From positions 183,113 through 247,112 of the IMG/VR virus record IMGVR_UViG_3300035703_000006: a stretch of DNA of 64,000 bases; one strand, given 5' to 3'. The position numbers were made by a program, and so were the translations under genes. Each line of letters begins with the position of its first letter. Position 1 is the stretch's first letter. Positions 6,878 through 63,810 of the stretch are shown piece after piece. The notes beneath the pieces are model-generated. The model saw nothing but the letters and a program-made list of their open reading frames with translations. It was not told the DNA's origin and did no database searches.

Positions 6878-9800
6878 ATGCCATTAGAAGTTACTACTAA
6901 TTTTAAAGATAGTAATGGTGCTGATTTGGGAACAAAATTAGTCACTAAAGATTACTTAATAAGTGTTTATTCTTCTATTGGGCAGAAAATTGGACTTACT
7001 CCAGAATTATGGGTTTGGGGTAATAATGGTAATGGGCAACTTGGAACCAATGATACAATAACCAAAACCACTCCAGTCACGACAGCTGCTGGTAGTTCTA
7101 CTTGGAAACAGATTTCTGGCGCACTTACTTATACTGCAGCAATTAAAACAGATGGAACTTTATGGACTTGGGGTTATGGTGCAAATGGAAGACTTGGAAA
7201 TATTTCAGGATATAGCGCACTTACACCAGTCACAACATTTGCAGGAGGAACTAACTGGAAACAAGTGAGTATTAGTTATGCTCACGCAGCAGCAGTCAAA
7301 ACAGATGGAACTCTGTGGGTTTGGGGAAATGGAGCTTTTGGAAGACTTGGAACATCAGAAAGTTTTCCATTATCTGCTCTTACTCCTATCACTACATTTT
7401 CTGGAGGAACTAACTGGTCAGATACTGCAACTGGAGCTGCAGAAGAACTTTATACTTTATCTGCTGGTTATCGAATTAACGCAGCAATCAAGACTGATGG
7501 AACTTTATGGACTTGGGGATCTGGATCTTCGATTGGAAATGGAAGTTTTAGTAACTCAGAAACTCCAGTCACAACATTTTCTGGAGGAACAACTTGGAAG
7601 CAATCTTCTTGCGGAAGAATTCACTCTGGGGCAATTAAAACTGATGGAACTTTATGGATGTTCGGTAGTGGTGTTAATGGAAAACTCGGAGACAATGATA
7701 CTGTATCAAAATCCACTCCAGTCACAACATTTACTGGTGGAACCAATTGGAAACAAGTTGCTTGTGGAGGATATCAAACAGCAGCAGTCAAAACGGATGG
7801 AACCTTATGGACTTGGGGAGATAATGGTTCTGCTCAACTTGGTAGACTTTTTGGAACTACTATAGCATTCCCTATGATTATAAGTAGAACCTGGGCAGAT
7901 ACTGCAACTGGTGCTGCTAATGAACTTTATACGTTTTCTGCAGGAAAACTTCATAGTGCAGGTATTAAAACTGATGGAACTTTATGGACTTGGGGAAATA
8001 ACTCATATGGTGTTACTTCATCTAGACAACTTGGAAATGGATTAACAACAGATTCTAGTACTCCAATTACTACATTTGCTGGAGGAACTACTTGGAAACA
8101 AGTAAGTGTTGGTTATTATCATACTGCAGCAATTAAAACTGATGGAACCTTATGGACTTGGGGAAATAATAATAGTGGAAGACTAGGAGATAACTCAACA
8201 ACAAATAGATCTACACCAGTCACTACATTTGCTGGAGGAACTACATGGAAACAAGTCTCATGTGGTTCTTTTCATACGGCAGCAACCAAAACTGATGGAA
8301 CTTTATGGGTTTGGGGATCTAATTCAAGTACTCAACTCGGAGATAATACATCAACTCAAAGAAATACTCCAGTCACAACATTTGCTGGAGGAACAACTTG
8401 GTCGCAAGTAAGTGCTGCAGATTCTCATACAGCAGCAATTAAAACTGATGGAACCTTATGGATTTGGGGACGTAATCTTAATGTACAACTTGGGATTAAT
8501 CAGTCAAGTAGTTTTCCCAAATCAACTCCAGTCACAACATTTGCTGGAGGAACAACTTGGTCGCAAGTTTCTTGTGGTATTTTACATACTGCAGCAATTA
8601 AAACTGATGGAACTTTATGGACTTGGGGATATGGTGGTAATGGAAGACTTGGAAATGGTATTATAGTCTCATCTAGAAGTACTCCAATTACAACATTTGC
8701 TGGAGGAACTAACTGGAAACAAGTTTCTTGTGGTACTAATCACACTGCAGCAGTAAAAACTGATGGAACTTTGTGGACTTGGGGTTTTAATAGTGGCGGT
8801 CAACTTGGAACTAATAATACATCTAGCATTAGTACCCCAGTTACAACATTTGCTGGGGGAACTACTTGGAAGCAAGTAAATGCTGCTATGGGTGGTAATC
8901 ATACAATAGCACTAAGAGATGATGGAACTAATAAAGAGTTATTTTCTTTTGGAAATAATGTTAGAGGTCAACTTGGATGTGCGGTTTCGCAAAATATACC
9001 AGGAGAAGTTTTTTCTTACACAAACAATTGGAAGCAAGTTAGTAGTGGAAGGTTTTATGTCTCTGCAATCAGAACCGATGGAACTTTATGGACTTGGGGA
9101 AATAATAGTGCAGCACAACTGGGAGATAATAGTAATGTAAATAAATCAACACCAGTAACTACCTTTGCTGGAGGAACTAACTGGAAACAAGTTTCTTGTG
9201 GTACTAATCACACTGCAGCAGTAAAAACTGATGGAACTTTATGGACTTGGGGAAATGGACTTTCTGGACAGATTGGGAATGCAAGTATAACTATTAGATC
9301 TACACCAGTCACTACATTTGCTGGAGGAACTACTTGGACTGAAGTTTCTTGTGGTTTATCACTATCAGACTCTCATACAGCAGCAATTAAATCTGATGGA
9401 ACTTTATGGGTGTGGGGAACTAACTCTCTTGCACAATTGGGTATCAATAACACAAACAATAAATCAACTCCAGTTACAACATTTGCTGGAGGAACTACTT
9501 GGAAACAGGTAAGTGCTGGTGGTGAGCATACAATTGCTTTGTCTGATGATACAATAAACAAAAGGTTGTATGTATTTGGACTCAATTCGAGTGGAGCACT
9601 TGGAGTTAAAATAAGTGTTTTAAATCCTGTCACAACATTTGCTGGAGGAACTAATTGGAAACAAGTTGCCTGTGGTGGATATCACACCTCAGCAATTAAA
9701 TCTGATGGAACCTTATGGACTTGGGGAAAAAATGACAAGGGACAAATAGGAGATAATGACACAACATCAACAAATAGATTAACTCCAGTCACTACATTTT

Positions 9801-37586: not shown

Positions 37587-37674
37587 GGAAGTGAGACTTG
37601 GTAGTCAGAGTCGTCTTATAAACGATTTGCCCCAGATTAGGGCCTTTGAGATGGTTCGAATCCATCCACTTCTA
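37587..37674 (+). tRNA. Atypical tRNA with anticodon TAT (nominally Ile)
   Basis: GGAAGTG/CACTTCT acceptor, AGTCGT-CTTATAA-ACGATT, long variable arm, GATGG-TTCGAAT-CCATC; TTGACA-N17-TACAAT promoter upstream. Confidence 0.75.
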
Positions 37675-37678
37675 CCTT

Positions 37679-37931: not shown

Positions 37932-38396
37932 ATGCCGATGCCTAGAAATTACACTGATGAGCAATTTATAGAAGCAGTTGAAACTTCTACAAGTATTAGA
38001 CAGGTATTGTTTAAACTTGGGCTAAAAGAAGCAGGTGGAAATTATAAAGTTGCTCAAAATAGAATGAAGCAACTTGGTGTTAATTTACTCTCTGGACCTA
38101 ATGGACAAGGTTGGAGTAAAGGAAAAACTCTTGGACCTAAAAGGTCTATTGAAGAATATTTAAAAGAAGATATAGTAGTTCAATCATTTCGACTCAAAAA
38201 TCGCCTATTAGCAGAAGGTCTCAAAGAACACAAGTGCGAGTGCTGTGGTATAACTAAATGGAATGGGCAACCAGCACCAATTGAACTTGATCACATAAAC
38301 GGCAACCATCACGATAATAGATTAGAAAATCTTCGTATCTTATGTCCTAATTGTCACGCTCAAACTGAAACTTACCGAGGAAAAAACAAAAAATGA
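37932..38396 (+). CDS. HNH homing endonuclease
   Basis: CECCG...ELDHINGNHHDNRLENLRILCPNCHAQT; TATAAATA at 37901. Confidence 0.9.
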   Translation: MPMPRNYTDEQFIEAVETSTSIRQVLFKLGLKEAGGNYKVAQNRMKQLGVNLLSGPNGQGWSKGKTLGPKRSIEEYLKEDIVVQSFRLKNRLLAEGLKEHKCECCGITKWNGQPAPIELDHINGNHHDNRLENLRILCPNCHAQTETYRGKNKK

Positions 38397-43881: not shown

Positions 43882-43955
43882 GCCGTGGGTAGTCTAGTGG
43901 TCAGGACAGGCAGACAATGCACTTGGAGTTTGGGTTCGATTCCCAATCTGCGGCA
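43882..43955 (+). ncRNA. tRNA-like RNA or pseudo-tRNA with aberrant anticodon arm
   Basis: GCCGTGGG/TCTGCGGC stem, normal D-arm, TTGGG-TTCGATT-CCCAA T-arm; no 7-nt anticodon loop. Confidence 0.7.
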
Positions 43956-44648: not shown

Positions 44649-44698
44649 TTATGGAGAGTAGGGGAATATTATAAATAACTATAGTTGTGGAGAGCACT

Positions 44699-45235
44699 AT
44701 GGTTACTTGTAAGTGTCAAAAATGTGGATTACAGTTTGAAAAGATTAAAAGTGAATATAATAGAAAAATTAAATTGGGAACTCCATTTTTTTGTAGTTTG
44801 AAATGTTCTAGTAGTTTTGATACTTCACATTTGGATAACTGGAGAAAAAGTGAGGAAAACAAAAAGTTTATAAAGCAGTTTAGTGGAAGTAGTAAAGATG
44901 AATATTCTCCTTTCAGAGAGACATTAAAAAAAGTCAAAAATAGAAGTAAATCTAAAAATAGAGAATGTGATATTGATTTGCAATATTTAAAAGAGGTTTG
45001 GGAAAATCAAAAGGGCAAATGTCCATATTTGAAAAGAAAATTAGTTCTTCCCCTAACTGACCAATCTCACGACAAATCAAACCCAAATCTAATTGCTAGT
45101 TTGGATAGAATTGATAGCTCTAAAGGATACGTAAAGGGAAACATACAATTTATCAGCACGACCTTAAATTTTGCTAAAAATAAATATTCTGAAAATGTTC
45201 TCTTGAATTTAATTGAAATGTGTGCTACTATATAA
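44699..45235 (+). CDS. HNH-like endonuclease
   Basis: N-terminal CxxC..FCS..C; QKGKCPY..ASLDRIDSSKGYVKGNIQFIS...N; TATAAATA at 44670. Confidence 0.8.
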   Translation: MVTCKCQKCGLQFEKIKSEYNRKIKLGTPFFCSLKCSSSFDTSHLDNWRKSEENKKFIKQFSGSSKDEYSPFRETLKKVKNRSKSKNRECDIDLQYLKEVWENQKGKCPYLKRKLVLPLTDQSHDKSNPNLIASLDRIDSSKGYVKGNIQFISTTLNFAKNKYSENVLLNLIEMCATI

Positions 45236-45237
45236 AG

Positions 45238-45457
45238 TGTTCAAGAGGATAAACCTCTATATTCCAACACATCGGGGCAGTACCGATTACCTCCATTACA
45301 GGGGGGTAAAACAGAATCGACTGGGGTGTATGTATTATCTGTTGACGGGACAAAAAACAAACGCAAACAACATTGTTGCATTCACTCGTCAGACCGCATT
45401 GGTTTGACCATAAAAGAGTGAGGGGGTTATAAGTTTCCTTCTTACCCAAAACTTATG
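45238..45457 (+). ncRNA. ssrA: tmRNA, circularly permuted two-piece type; tag ANNIVAFTRQTALV
   Basis: T-arm plus 3' acceptor strand TACCTCC-A (45271-45295) precede the 5' strand GGGGGTA (45302); G3-U70; AATCGAC D-loop; P2 TGGGGTGTA/TATATTCCA; tag 45363-45407; 3' pseudoknot; TTGAAT-N17-TACTAT promoter. Ends approximate. Confidence 0.88.
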
Positions 45458-45461
45458 CTGG

Positions 45462-45518
45462 GGACACTTGAAAAGGTGTCCCCTTTTTCGTCCAAGGTGG
45501 TTTTGAAGGTGCTATAAT
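45462..45518 (+). promoter_or_regulatory. Palindrome + -10 early promoter
   Basis: GGACACTT-N4-AGGTGTCC, TGCTATAAT. Confidence 0.7.
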
Positions 45519-49500: not shown

Positions 49501-49799
49501 ATTCTCACATCCCGTAGGTTTGCTCTGTTTGATTTTACTCTCCAGTGGGATGACTATGGTTCTGATGAAATCTTCCCAGCAATTTCATTGAGTATTGGTT
49601 CTAGTCATTTGCTTGGATTTTTCATCCGATACAAACGATTTCAATTTGATTGTAGTATAATTGACTCAAAACCTAGGGATTTGCAATGGTATCGTCAGCA
49701 TAAATAATAATGCTTGTGTTTGGTCGCAGAAGCAGAGATTAGGTGTCCTCGGGCACCTTTTCTTGTATAAATAATACAGACCAAACACAAAGTAGAATT

Positions 49800-50471
49800 A
49801 TGGTGAACCCATATAGATTTTATACTTACGCATATTTGCGGGTAGATAGAACTCCTTATTATATTGGTAAGGGTAGAGGAAATAGAGCATATTACAAATA
49901 TAAGGGAACAAAACCACCTAAAGACAAATCAAGAATAATACTCCTCAAACAGAATTTGACAGAGGAGGAATCATTCAAACACGAAAAGTATATGATTGCT
50001 GTCTTTGGTAGAAAAGATTTGGGAACTGGTATTCTTCATAACAGAACTGATGGTGGAGATGGTTCTTCTGGTTTGATAAGGACTGAAGAACATAAGAGTA
50101 AAATTCGTAAATCGTTACTTGGTAGACCTCGTTCTCAAGAAACTAAAGAAAAATTGAGAAAAGCAAATTTAGGAAAAATTCGCAACCCTTGTTCGCAAGA
50201 AACTAAAGATAAAATAGGTGCTGCCAATAGAGGAAAAAAACACTCTAAATAATCTAAAGAAAAAATTGGTGCTATTTGGTCAAATTGGTGGAGAATAACA
50301 TTTGATGATAATAGTGAGATTGTGATATTTGGATTATCTTCTTGGTGTAAGAAAAATAGTACATATAATAAATCTTGTCTTCTTTGTGTTTCATCAGGAA
50401 AACAGAAAAAACATAAAGATATTGTGTCAGTTGAAAAACTGGCACACTATACTCCTACAAGACCTTCTTGA
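49800..50471 (+). pseudogene. GIY-YIG + NUMOD3 homing endonuclease interrupted by in-frame TAA at 50250
   Basis: FYTYAYLR..PYYIGKG..RA..E...I..FGR..G.L.N.TDGG; NUMOD3 repeats; frame continues KHSK*SKEKIG...KKHK to 50471; TATAAATA at 49766. Confidence 0.75.
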
Positions 50472-60951: not shown

Positions 60952-61780
60952 GTATTCATCAAGTCAAGGGAGGTTTCAAGATGATTGACACTTGTGTTCT
61001 TCACGATGATTACGAGGACTTTGCTGAAAAGTATCTCGGTATTGATTATGATGACTATGTGACTTTTGAACTTGGTCTTCCTGATGAAGATGAACTTGAA
61101 ATTGAATATCCTGTAGGTATTTGATTTCAAAAGGAATGGGTTTGCCTCAAAGTTACCCACTTTTACTCACTTGACTTTTTATTAAATGTCTGCTAAACTG
61201 ATTGCTCTTGCTGCTGAAATTGTTGATATCAACCCTGCTGGTGCTCAACTGATTGTCAATCTGACTAAGGCAGAAACTGGTGCTGAGATTGTAGAAGCAC
61301 TGGATAATTATGATTCTGTAGTTCTTGAGTATCATACTGAATCTGTTGAAACTGAGGGTGAAGTAACTCTCACCGATGCAGATGGTGTTGTAACTTCTGT
61401 TTGATTTTTACTCTTTAATTTCATAACCAACTAATTTTATTATGGCACGTCGTTCTAAATCTGCATCTCGTCAAATGGTTGAATCTCTCAAAGACCAACT
61501 CACAGAGTATTTCCGTGAAAATGTTTTTGATGATTATGACTATGAAGATTTGACGGGTTCCGAACTCTTTGAAGCACTTATTGAAACATTCAAAGAACTT
61601 GAGAATGAACTCAAAGAAGAACTGAAACCAATTCAGTATGTGCTAAATAAACTTGACCCAGAGGATACTGAACCTCAAGTTCTCAACGGGTGATTCTTAT
61701 GGGCATCAAAGGTCCAAACTTTGAGTAAGTCCCACCCCCTCCATGCCTCTTTACAATGCACAAACAGGAGGGTCTCTTAT

Positions 61781-61853
61781 GGGGCAGCAGCATGACGGAT
61801 CATGCACCATCCTTCTAAGATGTAAGATGGGGGTTCAAATCCCTCCTGCCCTG
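61781..61853 (+). tRNA. tRNA-Arg(TCT)
   Basis: GGGGCAG/CTGCCCT; CATC-CTTCTAA-GATG. Confidence 0.88.
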
Positions 61854-61900
61854 TTTAATAGTCTATTTATATAAATAATAATAAATATCCATTGAACTAT

Positions 61901-63333: not shown

Positions 63334-63810
63334 ATGGACTACTTACAAATTGAACCAAATCAAACTATACTTGTACTCAATGCATCTTACGAACCAATCA
63401 ACTTTACAAATTGGAAAAGAGCTATTGTACTGCTTATGAAAAATAAAGCACAAGCACTTGGTAAAAGAGTCATTCGTTTGGTCAATTATATTAAGTTGCC
63501 CTACGAGAAACTTATGCAAAATAAACCATCAAGATCAATGATATACAAACGTGATGGTCATAAATGTCAGTATTGTGGTTCTACAAAGAATCTAACTATT
63601 GATCACATTATTCCACGTTCCCGTGGTGGTGAAGATACTTGGGAAAACTTGGTTGTTGCTTGTATGCCATGCAATACTAGAAAGAGTGACAAACTTCTTG
63701 AAGATACCAACTTAACTCTTCATACCATTCCAAGAAAACCAATCAACAAAATGCTTTTTACTTTAGATAGAGCAAATGTTGAAGAGTGGAATGAGTATTC
63801 TTATAGTTGA
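63334..63810 (+). CDS. HNH endonuclease (McrA-like)
   Basis: LVLNASYEP..RD...CQYCG..LTIDHIIPRSRGG..TWENLVVAC..CN..K. Confidence 0.9.
   Translation: MDYLQIEPNQTILVLNASYEPINFTNWKRAIVLLMKNKAQALGKRVIRLVNYIKLPYEKLMQNKPSRSMIYKRDGHKCQYCGSTKNLTIDHIIPRSRGGEDTWENLVVACMPCNTRKSDKLLEDTNLTLHTIPRKPINKMLFTLDRANVEEWNEYSYS

What the first reader, a model, noticed from the sequence alone, without database searches (positions are those of the whole stretch)
45203..45457. Phage two-piece tmRNA with cyanobacterial tag ending LV and an alphaproteobacterial-type T-loop
Seen: permuted order with only a 6-nt intervening segment (45296-45301), G3-U70, no encoded CCA, tag ANNIVAFTRQTALV, one 3' pseudoknot (GTGAGGGGG/TCCTTCTTAC; ATAAGTTT/AAACTTAT) and T-loop GGCAGTA. 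Known: picocyanobacteria have two-piece tmRNA with ANxIVxF...AA tags; C-terminal AA is the ClpX degron; GGCRGUA is described as the alphaproteobacterial/mitochondrial tmRNA signature. Inference: a phage ribosome-rescue RNA that frees stalled ribosomes while changing the proteolytic fate of tagged proteins.
Basis: partly seen in the sequence, partly recalled or inferred. Interest (0 to 1): 0.78.

Follow-up and report, generated by a model that had tools for sequence, protein, structure and literature searches.

The report
Cyanophage two-piece tmRNA with LV tag
A T4-like cyanophage carries its own working-looking ribosome-rescue RNA (a two-piece tmRNA) from a virus-only family whose tag lacks the usual Ala-Ala "destroy me" ending, and whose tRNA-like head was swapped for a type normally seen in alphaproteobacteria and their phages.

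Summary
Window 45203-45488 holds a promoter, a circularly permuted tmRNA gene and a terminator. All these are as described: G3:U70, A73, no CCA, a 6-nt linker at 45296-45301, T-loop GGCAGUA, tag ANNIVAFTRQTALV and one pseudoknot. Rfam RF04321 passes its threshold; RF01851 falls just short; ARAGORN misses it.

Phage two-piece tmRNAs, including cyanophage ones, are already published. Three points appear new.

1. The gene belongs to a short architecture found in 54+ IMG/VR contigs and in none of 185,579 species genomes. Its tags almost always end in Leu-Val or Ser-Val. About 75 sampled host two-piece tmRNAs all end in Ala-Ala. Synonymous codons keep Leu-Val, so the peptide end is under selection.

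2. The tRNA-like core is alpha-type: 41/45 identical to alpha-type phage tmRNAs, against at most 29/45 for sister cyanophage genes. It sits on a cyanophage scaffold, and module exchange is demonstrated. L136 and L168 have identical 3' halves and 55% identical 5' halves. L342 has a 52-nt patch in otherwise identical flanks.

3. ARAGORN misses all 11 unique members of this subclade.

Ribosome rescue is well supported. A changed proteolytic fate is plausible but untested, because V-ending tags are still weak degrons in Synechocystis.

The parts
45203..45231 (+). Sigma-70-type promoter: -35 TTGAAT (45203-08), 17-nt spacer, TG-extended -10 TGCTACTAT (45223-31). It ends 7 nt before the conserved GUUCAAGAGG start.
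   Evidence: Read from the sequence. TTGACA-17-TACTAT sits at the same distance in most relatives, including S-CAM1, S-CAM3 and AG-345-P14. The simple promoter scan did not call it (8 of 12 matches).
45239..45295 (+). Acceptor piece of the tmRNA: 5' strands of helix P2, the T-arm, the 3' strand of the acceptor stem and discriminator A73. CCA must be added after transcription.
   Evidence: Rfam alignments. In some relatives a tRNA 3' end abuts GUCCAAGAGG, which marks the 5' boundary.
45271..45287 (+). T-arm: 5-bp stem AUCGG/CCGAU with the non-canonical 7-nt T-loop GGCAGUA (45276-82).
   Evidence: The stem is 100% paired, and all 5 pairs covary across relatives. The loop matches the Rfam alpha_tmRNA consensus GGCgGUA.
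45288..45308 (+). Acceptor stem, UACCUCC (45288-94) paired with GGGGGUA (45302-08), closed in the precursor by A73 plus the 6-nt intervening segment UUACAG (45296-45301). G3:U70 is 45304:45292.
   Evidence: G3:U70 is invariant in 37/37, and pairs 5:68 and 7:66 covary.
45302..45488 (+). Coding piece: 5' acceptor strand, D-loop region, 3' strands of P2, tag frame, helix 5, pseudoknot and terminator.
45309..45321 (+). D-loop region AAACAGAAUCGAC, of the alpha type. The alpha consensus is AAAuAGGAUCGAC. Host cyanobacteria have cAAUGGUUUCGAC.
   Evidence: T-loop type and D-loop type are coupled in 88 of 89 unique cores, and the one exception is a false call.
45239..45351 (+). Helix P2, which holds the two pieces together: 45239-42 with 45348-51; 45247-53 with 45333-40; 45263-66 with 45322-25.
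   Evidence: RNAalifold consensus and pair counts: 97-100% paired, and 10 of 16 pairs show double changes.
45363..45407 (+). Tag reading frame: resume codon GCA, peptide ANNIVAFTRQTALV, stop UGA (45405-07). The stop lies inside helix 5 (45388-95 with 45401-08).
   Evidence: ARAGORN calls the same tags in sister genes with standard T-loops. Leu is encoded by TTG/TTA/CTA/CTT, Val by GTT/GTC/GTA, and the stop is TGA or TAG across relatives.
45418..45456 (+). Single H-type pseudoknot: S1 GUGAGGGGG/CCUUCUUAC and S2 AUAAGUUU/AAACUUAU.
   Evidence: S1 is 87% paired and S2 is 72% paired, with 6 pairs showing double changes. The unpaired cells come from a subfamily aligned out of register.
45460..45488 (+). 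Intrinsic terminator: a 10-bp GC-rich hairpin plus a U run.
   Evidence: Relatives carry one of two alternative terminator hairpins at the same place.

Best explanation
This is a functional, phage-encoded two-piece tmRNA (ssrA) gene at the end of the phage's tRNA gene array.

Shown by sequence and comparison:
- It has its own sigma-70-type promoter and an intrinsic terminator.
- Its precursor folds into a tRNA-like domain with G3:U70 and A73, a P2 helix joining the two halves, a tag frame, a stop-containing helix 5 and one pseudoknot.
- It belongs to a short, virus-only cyanophage tmRNA architecture whose tags end in Leu-Val or Ser-Val instead of the host's Val-Ala-Ala.
- Its tRNA-like core (T-arm and D-loop) is of the alphaproteobacterial/phage type, set in a cyanophage scaffold. 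Such cores are exchanged between cyanophage tmRNA genes by recombination.

Inferred from established tmRNA biology:
- Host RNase P cuts 5' of G1 (45302).
- A 3' processing enzyme trims to A73 (45295), and the CCA-adding enzyme adds CCA, as it must for 21 of the phage's 25 tRNA genes.
- Host AlaRS charges the RNA through G3:U70.
- With host SmpB and EF-Tu it enters ribosomes stalled on broken mRNAs during infection. These should be plentiful if host mRNA is degraded, as is generally assumed for T4-like phages.
- It adds A-ANNIVAFTRQTALV and releases the ribosome at UGA.

More speculative, about 0.45: the tag keeps the conserved N-terminal part but lacks the terminal Ala-Ala. Tagged products would then be degraded more slowly, or by another route, than host-tagged ones. 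The phage would gain ribosome recycling without loading the host's ClpXP pathway.
For: Identity as a tmRNA:
- RF04321 scores 47.9 bits against a threshold of 47. RF01851 scores 65.2 bits for the window and 84.9 bits for clade member L136.
- Covariation and the invariant G3:U70; fold z-score -4.3; terminator; conserved promoter.

Virus-only family:
- The architecture-specific pattern gives 0 hits in 185,579 species genomes and 54 IMG/VR contigs.
- Host genes all have T-arm AGCGG-UUCGAUU-CCGCU and tags ending AA, in about 75 of 75 two-piece genes sampled.

Tag ends:
- In the short architecture the contig counts are 46 LV, 4 SV, 2 AA and 1 TA. Later scans added 8 contigs ending PSLV and 8 with VNNIV..VSV.
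- Synonymous codons and two different stop codons preserve Leu-Val.
- L137 reads ..ALVAA, so the LV type corresponds to loss of the two Ala codons.

Alpha-type core:
- The window's 45-nt core is 41/45 identical to L039/L061/L111. The four differences form two compensatory base-pair changes. The best match among standard cyanophage cores is 29/45.
- Rfam consensus sequences for the alpha and cyano families agree with this split.

Recombination:
- L136 and L168 have 3' modules identical at 140/140 and 5' modules 55% identical.
- L342 differs from L343 and L337 by a contiguous patch of about 52 nt within identical flanks.

Processing context:
- The gene follows a 26-tRNA array, and 21 of 25 tRNA genes lack CCA.
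Against: - There is no expression, processing, charging or tagging data.
- ARAGORN does not call the gene, and RF01851 is below its gathering score for the window itself.
- No smpB was found, so function depends on the host protein accepting an alpha-type core. Only 28 ORFs of a 64-kb window were scanned.
- Whether Leu-Val ends escape Clp proteases is unknown. E. coli-type tags ending ASV or AAV still reduce EYFP accumulation in Synechocystis, though less than LVA (PMC2860132).
- 'Virus-only' rests on one representative genome per species and on exact-pattern scans.
Confidence: 0.8

Rival explanations
1. It is an ordinary, recently captured copy of the host's ssrA gene with no phage-specific properties.
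For: The overall layout and the first ten tag residues are cyanobacterial. Lack of CCA and a short linker are host-like.
Against: Host genes are nearly uniform: T-arm AGCGG-UUCGAUU-CCGCU, D-loop c/uAAUGGUUUCGAC and tags ending ..PVAA. None of these is shared here. The short architecture has 0 hits in 185,579 species genomes. The window scores only 65 bits on the cyano model, against 160-186 bits for the best-scoring viral loci with host-like ..VAA tag endings (L123, L127, L158, L142, L137).
Confidence: 0.03
2. It is a decaying or non-functional relic: a pseudogene, or an attachment-site fragment.
For: ARAGORN misses it. It has a non-canonical T-loop, is below the RF01851 threshold, and has an unusual tag end.
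Against: Compensatory changes maintain every helix. G3:U70 is invariant, and the promoter and terminator are conserved. The tag frame is intact, with synonymous variation, in about 27 contigs of the GGCAGUA type. The gene is full length, and the phage is a lytic T4-like type.
Confidence: 0.04
3. It acts mainly as a decoy or competitor. It would soak up host SmpB, or block host trans-translation, as reported for the mycobacteriophage DS6A TLD-only RNA. Tagging would be secondary.
For: A TLD-only phage RNA is reported to inhibit tmRNA (PMC4131195). The tRNA-like core is the part that is swapped and diversified among phages, as expected if SmpB binding is the target of selection.
Against: The tag frame, the stop-containing helix 5 and the pseudoknot are conserved, and the peptide C-terminus is under selection. 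A pure decoy would need none of these.
Confidence: 0.1
4. It is a working tmRNA, but Leu-Val ends are still good degrons in picocyanobacteria, or target another protease. The proteolytic fate would then be tuned rather than changed in kind.
For: Tags ending ASV and AAV lower EYFP levels in Synechocystis, less than LVA does (PMC2860132). Hydrophobic C-termini are common protease signals (general knowledge).
Against: All sampled hosts keep Ala-Ala, as do 48 of 50 alpha-type phage tags. Cyanophage tags have repeatedly left it, for LV, SV, TA and AL ends. This argues that the difference matters.
Confidence: 0.35
5. The GGCAGUA T-loop and matching D-loop arose by convergent mutation inside the cyanophage lineage, not by acquisition of an alpha-type module.
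For: The acceptor stem (U66:A7), the absence of CCA and the 6-nt linker between T-arm and D-loop are cyanophage-like, not alpha-like. The two loops contact each other in tRNA-like folds, so they could co-evolve.
Against: No intermediate T-loops were seen among 30 unique standard cores. The window's T-stem and whole D-loop also match a specific alpha-type group (41/45). L342 shows a whole-patch replacement between 100% identical flanks, which point mutation cannot produce.
Confidence: 0.15

Closest known systems
Two-piece tmRNA of marine picocyanobacteria (Rfam RF01851, cyano_tmRNA)
   Same: Permuted gene order, no encoded CCA, short linker, P2 pairing, tag beginning ANNIV.F.R, stop inside helix 5, a 3' pseudoknot and a terminator hairpin.
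   Different: - Host T-arm and D-loop are invariant and canonical (UUCGAUU; AAUGGUUUCGAC).
- Host tags end ..PVAA.
- Host genes carry an extra 5' hairpin and an extra helix before the tag, both missing here.
- The window scores below the family threshold.
Alphaproteobacterial two-piece tmRNA (Rfam RF01849), and the many alpha-type tmRNAs of marine phages such as OM43 phage Melnitz and pelagimyophages (PMC9004378)
   Same: T-loop GGCRGUA and D-loop AAAUAGGAUCGAC. At least 120 IMG/VR contigs carry such genes. The window's 45-nt core is 41/45 identical to one such group.
   Different: Alpha-type genes encode CCA (all but a few), have longer linkers, carry ANDNFA-like tags ending in AA (48 of 50) and have different P2 and 3' domains.
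Published cyanophage tmRNAs (S-CAM1, S-CAM3, S-SSM7/S-SSM6a, S-CRM01, S-CBWM1, AG-345-P14; listed in Table S1 of PMC9004378)
   Same: Same lineage, same conserved promoter and GUUCAAGAGG start, position next to tRNA genes, and tags that depart from the host's end.
   Different: The five isolate tmRNAs fetched here (S-CBWM1 was not) have standard T-loops and tags ending VAA, VTA, ATA or AAL. No record among 50,697 phage genomes matches the window's gene. Neither the LV tags nor the alpha-type core appear in the papers I could search.
Mycobacteriophage one-piece tmRNAs (Bxz1 group) and the DS6A TLD-only RNA (PMC4131195)
   Same: Phage-borne components of the trans-translation system.
   Different: They have the one-piece gene form, unrelated hosts and tags. 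DS6A lacks a tag frame altogether.

Membership tests
Permuted (two-piece) tmRNA | Gene order T-arm, then 3' acceptor strand, then linker, then 5' acceptor strand, then mRNA-like domain | tested here: met
Permuted (two-piece) tmRNA | 7-bp acceptor stem with G3:U70 and discriminator A73 (alanine identity) | tested here: met
   45288-94 with 45302-08. G3:U70 is invariant in 37/37 relatives.
Permuted (two-piece) tmRNA | Score at or above the Rfam RF04321 gathering threshold | tested here: met
   47.9 bits against 47, a narrow margin. Clade member L136 scores 68.2 bits.
Permuted (two-piece) tmRNA | Helix P2 joining the two pieces, supported by covariation | tested here: met
   16 pairs, 97-100% paired, 10 with double changes.
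Permuted (two-piece) tmRNA | Short tag frame starting at an Ala resume codon and ending at an in-frame stop | tested here: met
   GCA 45363 to UGA 45405-07.
Permuted (two-piece) tmRNA | Cleavage into two RNAs, CCA at the 3' end, alanylation, SmpB binding, trans-translation | not testable with these tools
   Needs RNA and protein experiments. No CCA is encoded, as in host genes.
cyano_tmRNA (RF01851, host lineage) | Score at or above the gathering threshold of 70 bits | tested here: not met
   65.2 bits for the window. Relatives score 85-170 bits.
cyano_tmRNA (RF01851, host lineage) | Canonical T-loop UUCGAUU with D-loop AAUGGUUUCGAC | tested here: not met
   The window has GGCAGUA and AAACAGAAUCGAC.
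cyano_tmRNA (RF01851, host lineage) | Tag ANxIVxFSRQxAPVAA ending in Ala-Ala | tested here: not met
   The N-terminal ten residues match, but the end is ..TALV.
alpha_tmRNA (RF01849) | T-loop GGCRGUA and D-loop AAAUAGGAUCGAC | tested here: met
   T-loop 7/7. D-loop 11/13 in the window and 12/13 in clade members.
alpha_tmRNA (RF01849) | Encoded CCA, ANDN-type tag ending LAA, alpha-type P2 and 3' domain | tested here: not met
   No CCA, a cyano-type tag and a cyano-type scaffold. RF01849 was not the reported best family.

The most novel reading that the evidence does not exclude
Cyanophages carry a virus-only tmRNA family that re-programmes trans-translation rather than merely boosting it.

- The phage RNA would out-compete host tmRNA for SmpB and stalled ribosomes.
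- It would append a tag that keeps the conserved N-terminal part but has lost the Ala-Ala degron. Ribosomes would be recycled while tagged products are spared from, or diverted away from, ClpXP.
- The tRNA-like cores, including alpha-type ones, would be swapped among phages as interchangeable modules that tune the interaction with host factors such as SmpB, processing or modification enzymes, or a defence that targets canonical T-loops.
Probability: 0.3. Interest if true: 0.8.

Novelty: new variant of a known kind. Interest (0 to 1): 0.6.

Why it matters
Why phages carry tmRNA genes is an open question, and the literature I could search offers only speculation (PMC9004378).

This family gives the question a concrete handle. 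It is a natural, recurrent and selected change of the degron end (Val-Ala-Ala to Leu-Val or Ser-Val), and it occurs only in the viral copies. That makes the competing ideas 'rescue without degradation' and 'rescue with degradation' directly testable in a phage-host pair of global ecological weight.

The mosaic tRNA-like core shows two things. tmRNA domains are exchanged as modules between marine phage lineages. An alpha-type T-loop/D-loop pair is evidently tolerated in cyanobacterial hosts, which bears on how SmpB and processing enzymes recognise tmRNA.

There is also a practical point. ARAGORN misses this whole subclade, the cyano covariance model scores the window itself below its threshold, and GenBank records of cultured cyanophages leave their tmRNA genes unannotated or covered by 'hypothetical protein' CDSs. 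Surveys of viral tmRNAs therefore undercount them.

Tried and rejected
- blastn of the gene against 50,697 phage records found nothing. The low-complexity filter may have contributed. Sister genes did find S-CAM1, S-CAM3, S-CRM01, S-SSM7 and AG-345-P14.
- I first took the long 'type B' viral tmRNAs with ..APVAA tags for host contamination. I rejected this because their T-stem (AGGGG/CCCCU) differs from the invariant host AGCGG/CCGCU, and because isolates S-CAM1 and S-SSM7 carry that type.
- I considered L025, L076 and L093 (GGCAGUA, no CCA, 5-nt linker) as possible donors of the core. Their tags are ADESLALAA-like and their scaffolds are unrelated, so there is no evidence for this.
- L039, the closest alpha-type core, lies in a T4-like myophage whose NrdA is about 69% identical to both cyanophage and pelagiphage proteins. 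Its host could not be assigned.
- The papers that describe the alpha T-loop signature (Keiler 2000; Sharkady and Williams 2004) are not held, and a search for 'GGCRGUA' found nothing. I used the Rfam alpha consensus instead.
- No SmpB or CCA-adding enzyme domain turned up in 28 window ORFs scanned with Pfam. The window is only part of the genome, so this is uninformative.
- The simple promoter scan did not call the promoter. Conservation in relatives did show it.
- My first TLD parser mis-registered the acceptor stem by one base. My hand-counted coordinates were also off by one. Both were corrected by script.
- The supplements of the 2025 tmRNA database paper that are held contain no cyanophage tags.
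- The metagenome scan was not used.
Full report
**What is there**

The window is part of a T4-like cyanomyovirus. Its nearest but distant relatives are S-SRM01, S-PM2 and S-CREM1, each covering 6% or less of a 10-kb query. It carries a 26-gene tRNA array at 37.6-44.6 kb.

An endonuclease ORF lies at 44687-45235 (phrog_3322, E 5e-24). Directly after it, the sequence at 45203-45488 reads as a complete transcription unit for a circularly permuted tmRNA:
- -35 TTGAAT at 45203-08, then TG-extended -10 TGCTACTAT at 45223-31.
- A conserved 5' motif GUUCAAGAGG at 45239.
- T-arm at 45271-87, with T-loop GGCAGUA.
- 3' acceptor strand at 45288-94, A73 at 45295, and no CCA.
- Linker UUACAG at 45296-45301.
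- 5' acceptor strand at 45302-08, with G3:U70.
- D-loop region AAACAGAAUCGAC at 45309-21.
- Tag frame at 45363-45404 reading ANNIVAFTRQTALV, with stop UGA at 45405-07 inside helix 5.
- One pseudoknot at 45418-56.
- An intrinsic terminator at 45460-83 followed by a U run.

**Is it more than chance?**

- Rfam's general permuted-tmRNA model (RF04321) passes its threshold narrowly, at 47.9 bits against 47.
- The cyanobacterial model (RF01851) aligns end to end at 65.2 bits, with E 2e-17 on the local search. This is below its threshold of 70.
- ARAGORN reports nothing.
- The precursor folds with a z-score of -4.3.

Comparison is the stronger test. I aligned 37 unique relatives (alignment A1). On this alignment the tRNA-like helices and the three P2 segments are 97-100% paired. 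Thirty of 53 pairs show compensatory double changes, a level no shuffle out of 500 reached. G3:U70 never varies. The gene is real and under selection for structure.

**Relatives**

Pattern scans of IMG/VR show that two-piece tmRNAs are common in marine viruses. Every hit is a plausible tmRNA. Nearly all are alpha-type, with encoded CCA, and 48 of the 50 tags ARAGORN called end in AA.

A scan for the cyanobacterial tag start, blind to both T-loop and tag end, gave 92 loci, of which about 88 are tmRNAs. They fall into two groups:
- A short architecture ('A'), to which the window belongs.
- A longer one ('B'), found in isolates S-CAM1/S-CAM3 (tag ..STVAA), S-SSM7 (..ELVTA) and AG-345-P14 (..QLATA). 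Freshwater S-CRM01 reads ..SLVAAL.

Those isolate genes are unannotated, or overlaid by hypothetical CDSs, in GenBank.

**Hosts**

About 75 of these are two-piece genes of Prochlorococcus, Synechococcus, Cyanobium and Vulcanococcus. They are strikingly uniform:
- T-arm AGCGG-UUCGAUU-CCGCU.
- D-loop c/uAAUGGUUUCGAC.
- No CCA.
- Linkers from 5 nt to over 100 nt; Prochlorococcus usually has the 6-nt 'ctattt'.
- Every tag ends in Ala-Ala, nearly always ..PVAA.

The tag end and the T-loop are not. A pattern specific to architecture A found 0 hits in 185,579 species genomes and 54 viral contigs. Within the limits of exact-pattern scans, this architecture is virus-only.

**The tag**

Contig counts for architecture A are 46 LV, 4 SV, 2 AA and 1 TA. 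Architecture B splits 14 AA and 14 TA. Later scans added 8 contigs ending ..PSLV and 8 with a GUA resume codon ending ..VSV.

Across these genes Leu is written TTG, TTA, CTA or CTT. Val is written GTT, GTC or GTA. The stop is TGA or TAG. The Leu-Val end is therefore kept at the peptide level, even though the nucleotides also sit in helix 5.

One architecture-A gene reads ..KALVAA (L137). The LV type is equivalent to losing the two Ala codons. The first ten residues (ANNIVAF[S/T]RQ) stay close to the host's.

What the change does is not shown. In Synechocystis, E. coli-type tags ending ASV or AAV still lower EYFP accumulation, less than LVA does (PMC2860132). I therefore expect weakened or re-routed degradation rather than none, and I hold this at about 0.45.

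**The tRNA-like core**

The Rfam alpha consensus has T-loop GGCgGUA and D-loop AAAuAGGAUCGAC. The cyano consensus has UUCGAUU and cAAUGGUUUCGAC. The window has the alpha states at both sites.

Over 89 unique cores, T-loop type and D-loop type are coupled in all but one case, and that exception is a false call. I defined a 45-nt core as T-arm, both acceptor strands, A73 and the D-loop.
- The window's core is 41/45 identical to the alpha-type genes of L039, L061 and L111. The four differences form two compensatory pair changes.
- Against sister cyanophage genes with standard loops it is at most 29/45 identical.
- The parts between and around the loops (U66:A7, no CCA, 6-nt linker, GUUCAAGAGG leader, everything 3' of P2) are cyanophage-like.

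Exchange of modules is directly visible.
- L136 (GGCAGUA core) and L168 (standard core) have 3' modules identical at 140 of 140 positions. Their 5' modules are only 55% identical.
- The GGCAGUA 5' module is found with at least three different 3' modules, and each of these also occurs with standard 5' modules.
- L342 carries a different GGCAGUA T-arm (TCGGG/CCCGA) in a contiguous patch of about 52 nt. Its flanks are identical to L343 and L337. This is a second, independent replacement.

I conclude the core was acquired by recombination from a GGCAGUA-type tmRNA. I give convergence about 0.15. The donor was not found. In all, about 27 IMG/VR contigs carry a GGCAGUA core on a cyanophage scaffold.

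ARAGORN finds 49 of 54 unique standard-core cyanophage tmRNAs, calling the same tags. It finds 0 of 11 with the GGCAGUA core.

**How it most likely works**

Transcription comes from a conserved sigma-70-type promoter. TTGACA-17-TACTAT sits at a fixed distance from the gene in most relatives. In a few, the gene instead abuts the 3' end of a tRNA and must be co-transcribed with it. In L142 a tRNA-Asn even sits inside the linker.

The tRNA-processing machinery would release the two pieces. CCA has to be added, as it must for 21 of the window's 25 tRNA genes. The remaining steps are inferred from established tmRNA biology, not shown here: charging through G3:U70, SmpB and EF-Tu delivery, tagging, and release at UGA.

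**What is known and what is new**

Phage tmRNAs have been known since the mycobacteriophage examples (PMC4131195). Two-piece tmRNAs in marine phages were surveyed by Buchholz et al. (PMC9004378). They listed 53 permuted genes, cyanophages among them, and proposed that viral copies follow their hosts' lineages. The tmRNA database holds 79 phage sequences (PMC11915505).

In six full-text searches I found no description of three things:
- a virus-only cyanophage architecture;
- its Leu-Val or Ser-Val tag ends;
- alpha-type cores on cyanophage scaffolds.

I therefore rate this a new variant of a known kind. It is of moderate to good interest because it makes the purpose of viral tmRNAs experimentally approachable.

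**Limits**

- All distribution statements rest on exact-pattern scans, several of which were capped at 120 rows, and on one genome per species.
- No experiment bears on expression or tagging.
- Only part of the phage genome was available to look for smpB.

Noticed in passing
L142:1318-1695 (tRNA at 1412-1486): A tRNA-Asn(GTT) gene sits inside the intervening segment of a cyanophage two-piece tmRNA gene (tag ANNIVSFSRQRVPVAA). Processing the tRNA would free both tmRNA ends.
   Followed up: partly
L342 (tmRNA about 7220-7470) compared with L343 and L337: A second, independent GGCAGUA T-arm with a different stem (TCGGG/CCCGA), acceptor stem, linker and D-loop. It forms a patch of about 52 nt between flanks identical to sister genes with a standard T-arm. 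The tag is ANKIVAFSRTSVPSLV.
   Followed up: yes
L345-L350, L352, L353: Eight contigs have the window-type core but a GUA (Val) resume codon instead of GCA. The tag frame reads VNNIVAFSRQTVSV.
   Followed up: partly
L351:8300-8560: The window-type GGCAGUA core sits on a scaffold resembling the freshwater S-CRM01 tmRNA. The tag region reads ..NNIVSFRRTAVAV, and the 3' strand of P2 looks shortened. It may be degenerate.
   Followed up: partly
window 44687-45235 (+): A 182-aa endonuclease ORF (phrog_3322, HNH/endonuclease VII-like) is wedged between the last tRNA and the tmRNA. Its 3' end overlaps the tmRNA -35 element. Relatives L045, L139 and L208 have a tRNA there instead, so it looks like an inserted homing-type gene. 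Further HNH/NUMOD ORFs lie at 37932-38396, 49743-50252 and 63334-63810.
   Followed up: partly
window 61737-61773 (+): An abiF RNA motif (RF03085, 50.8 bits against a threshold of 37) lies immediately upstream of tRNA-Arg(TCT) at 61780-61854.
   Followed up: no
window 43883-43954 and 37587-37676: The tRNA callers disagree twice. Rfam gives a weak tRNA hit (33.4 bits) at 43883-43954 that ARAGORN does not call. ARAGORN calls a 90-nt tRNA-Ile(tat) at 37587-37676 that Rfam does not match.
   Followed up: no
L211 (S-CAM1), L212 (S-CAM3), L213 (S-CRM01), L214 (S-SSM7): Cultured cyanophage genomes carry full tmRNA genes that GenBank leaves unannotated or covers with 'hypothetical protein' CDSs. Examples are S250808_204 in S-CAM3 and SSSM7_025 in S-SSM7.
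   Followed up: partly
Type B viral tmRNAs, for example L123, L147, L131: ARAGORN reads a longer tag starting at a second in-frame Ala codon seven codons upstream (for example AKTSDVAANNIVAFSRTRELATA). Which resume codon is used is unclear.
   Followed up: no
L025, L076, L093, L355-L357, L354: These are alpha-type (GGCAGUA) viral tmRNAs that, unusually, lack encoded CCA and have a 5-nt linker. Their tags are ADESLALAA-like. The host is unknown.
   Followed up: partly
L039:11809-13086: A T4-like marine myophage contig with an alpha-type tmRNA also encodes a full cytochrome b (Pfam Cytochrome_B, E 8e-70).
   Followed up: no
L124:2452-2659 and L158:11738-11823: Rfam finds a manA RNA motif (100 bits) inside a cyanophage tRNA array, and a PhotoRC-II motif, on contigs that carry architecture-A tmRNAs.
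   Followed up: no
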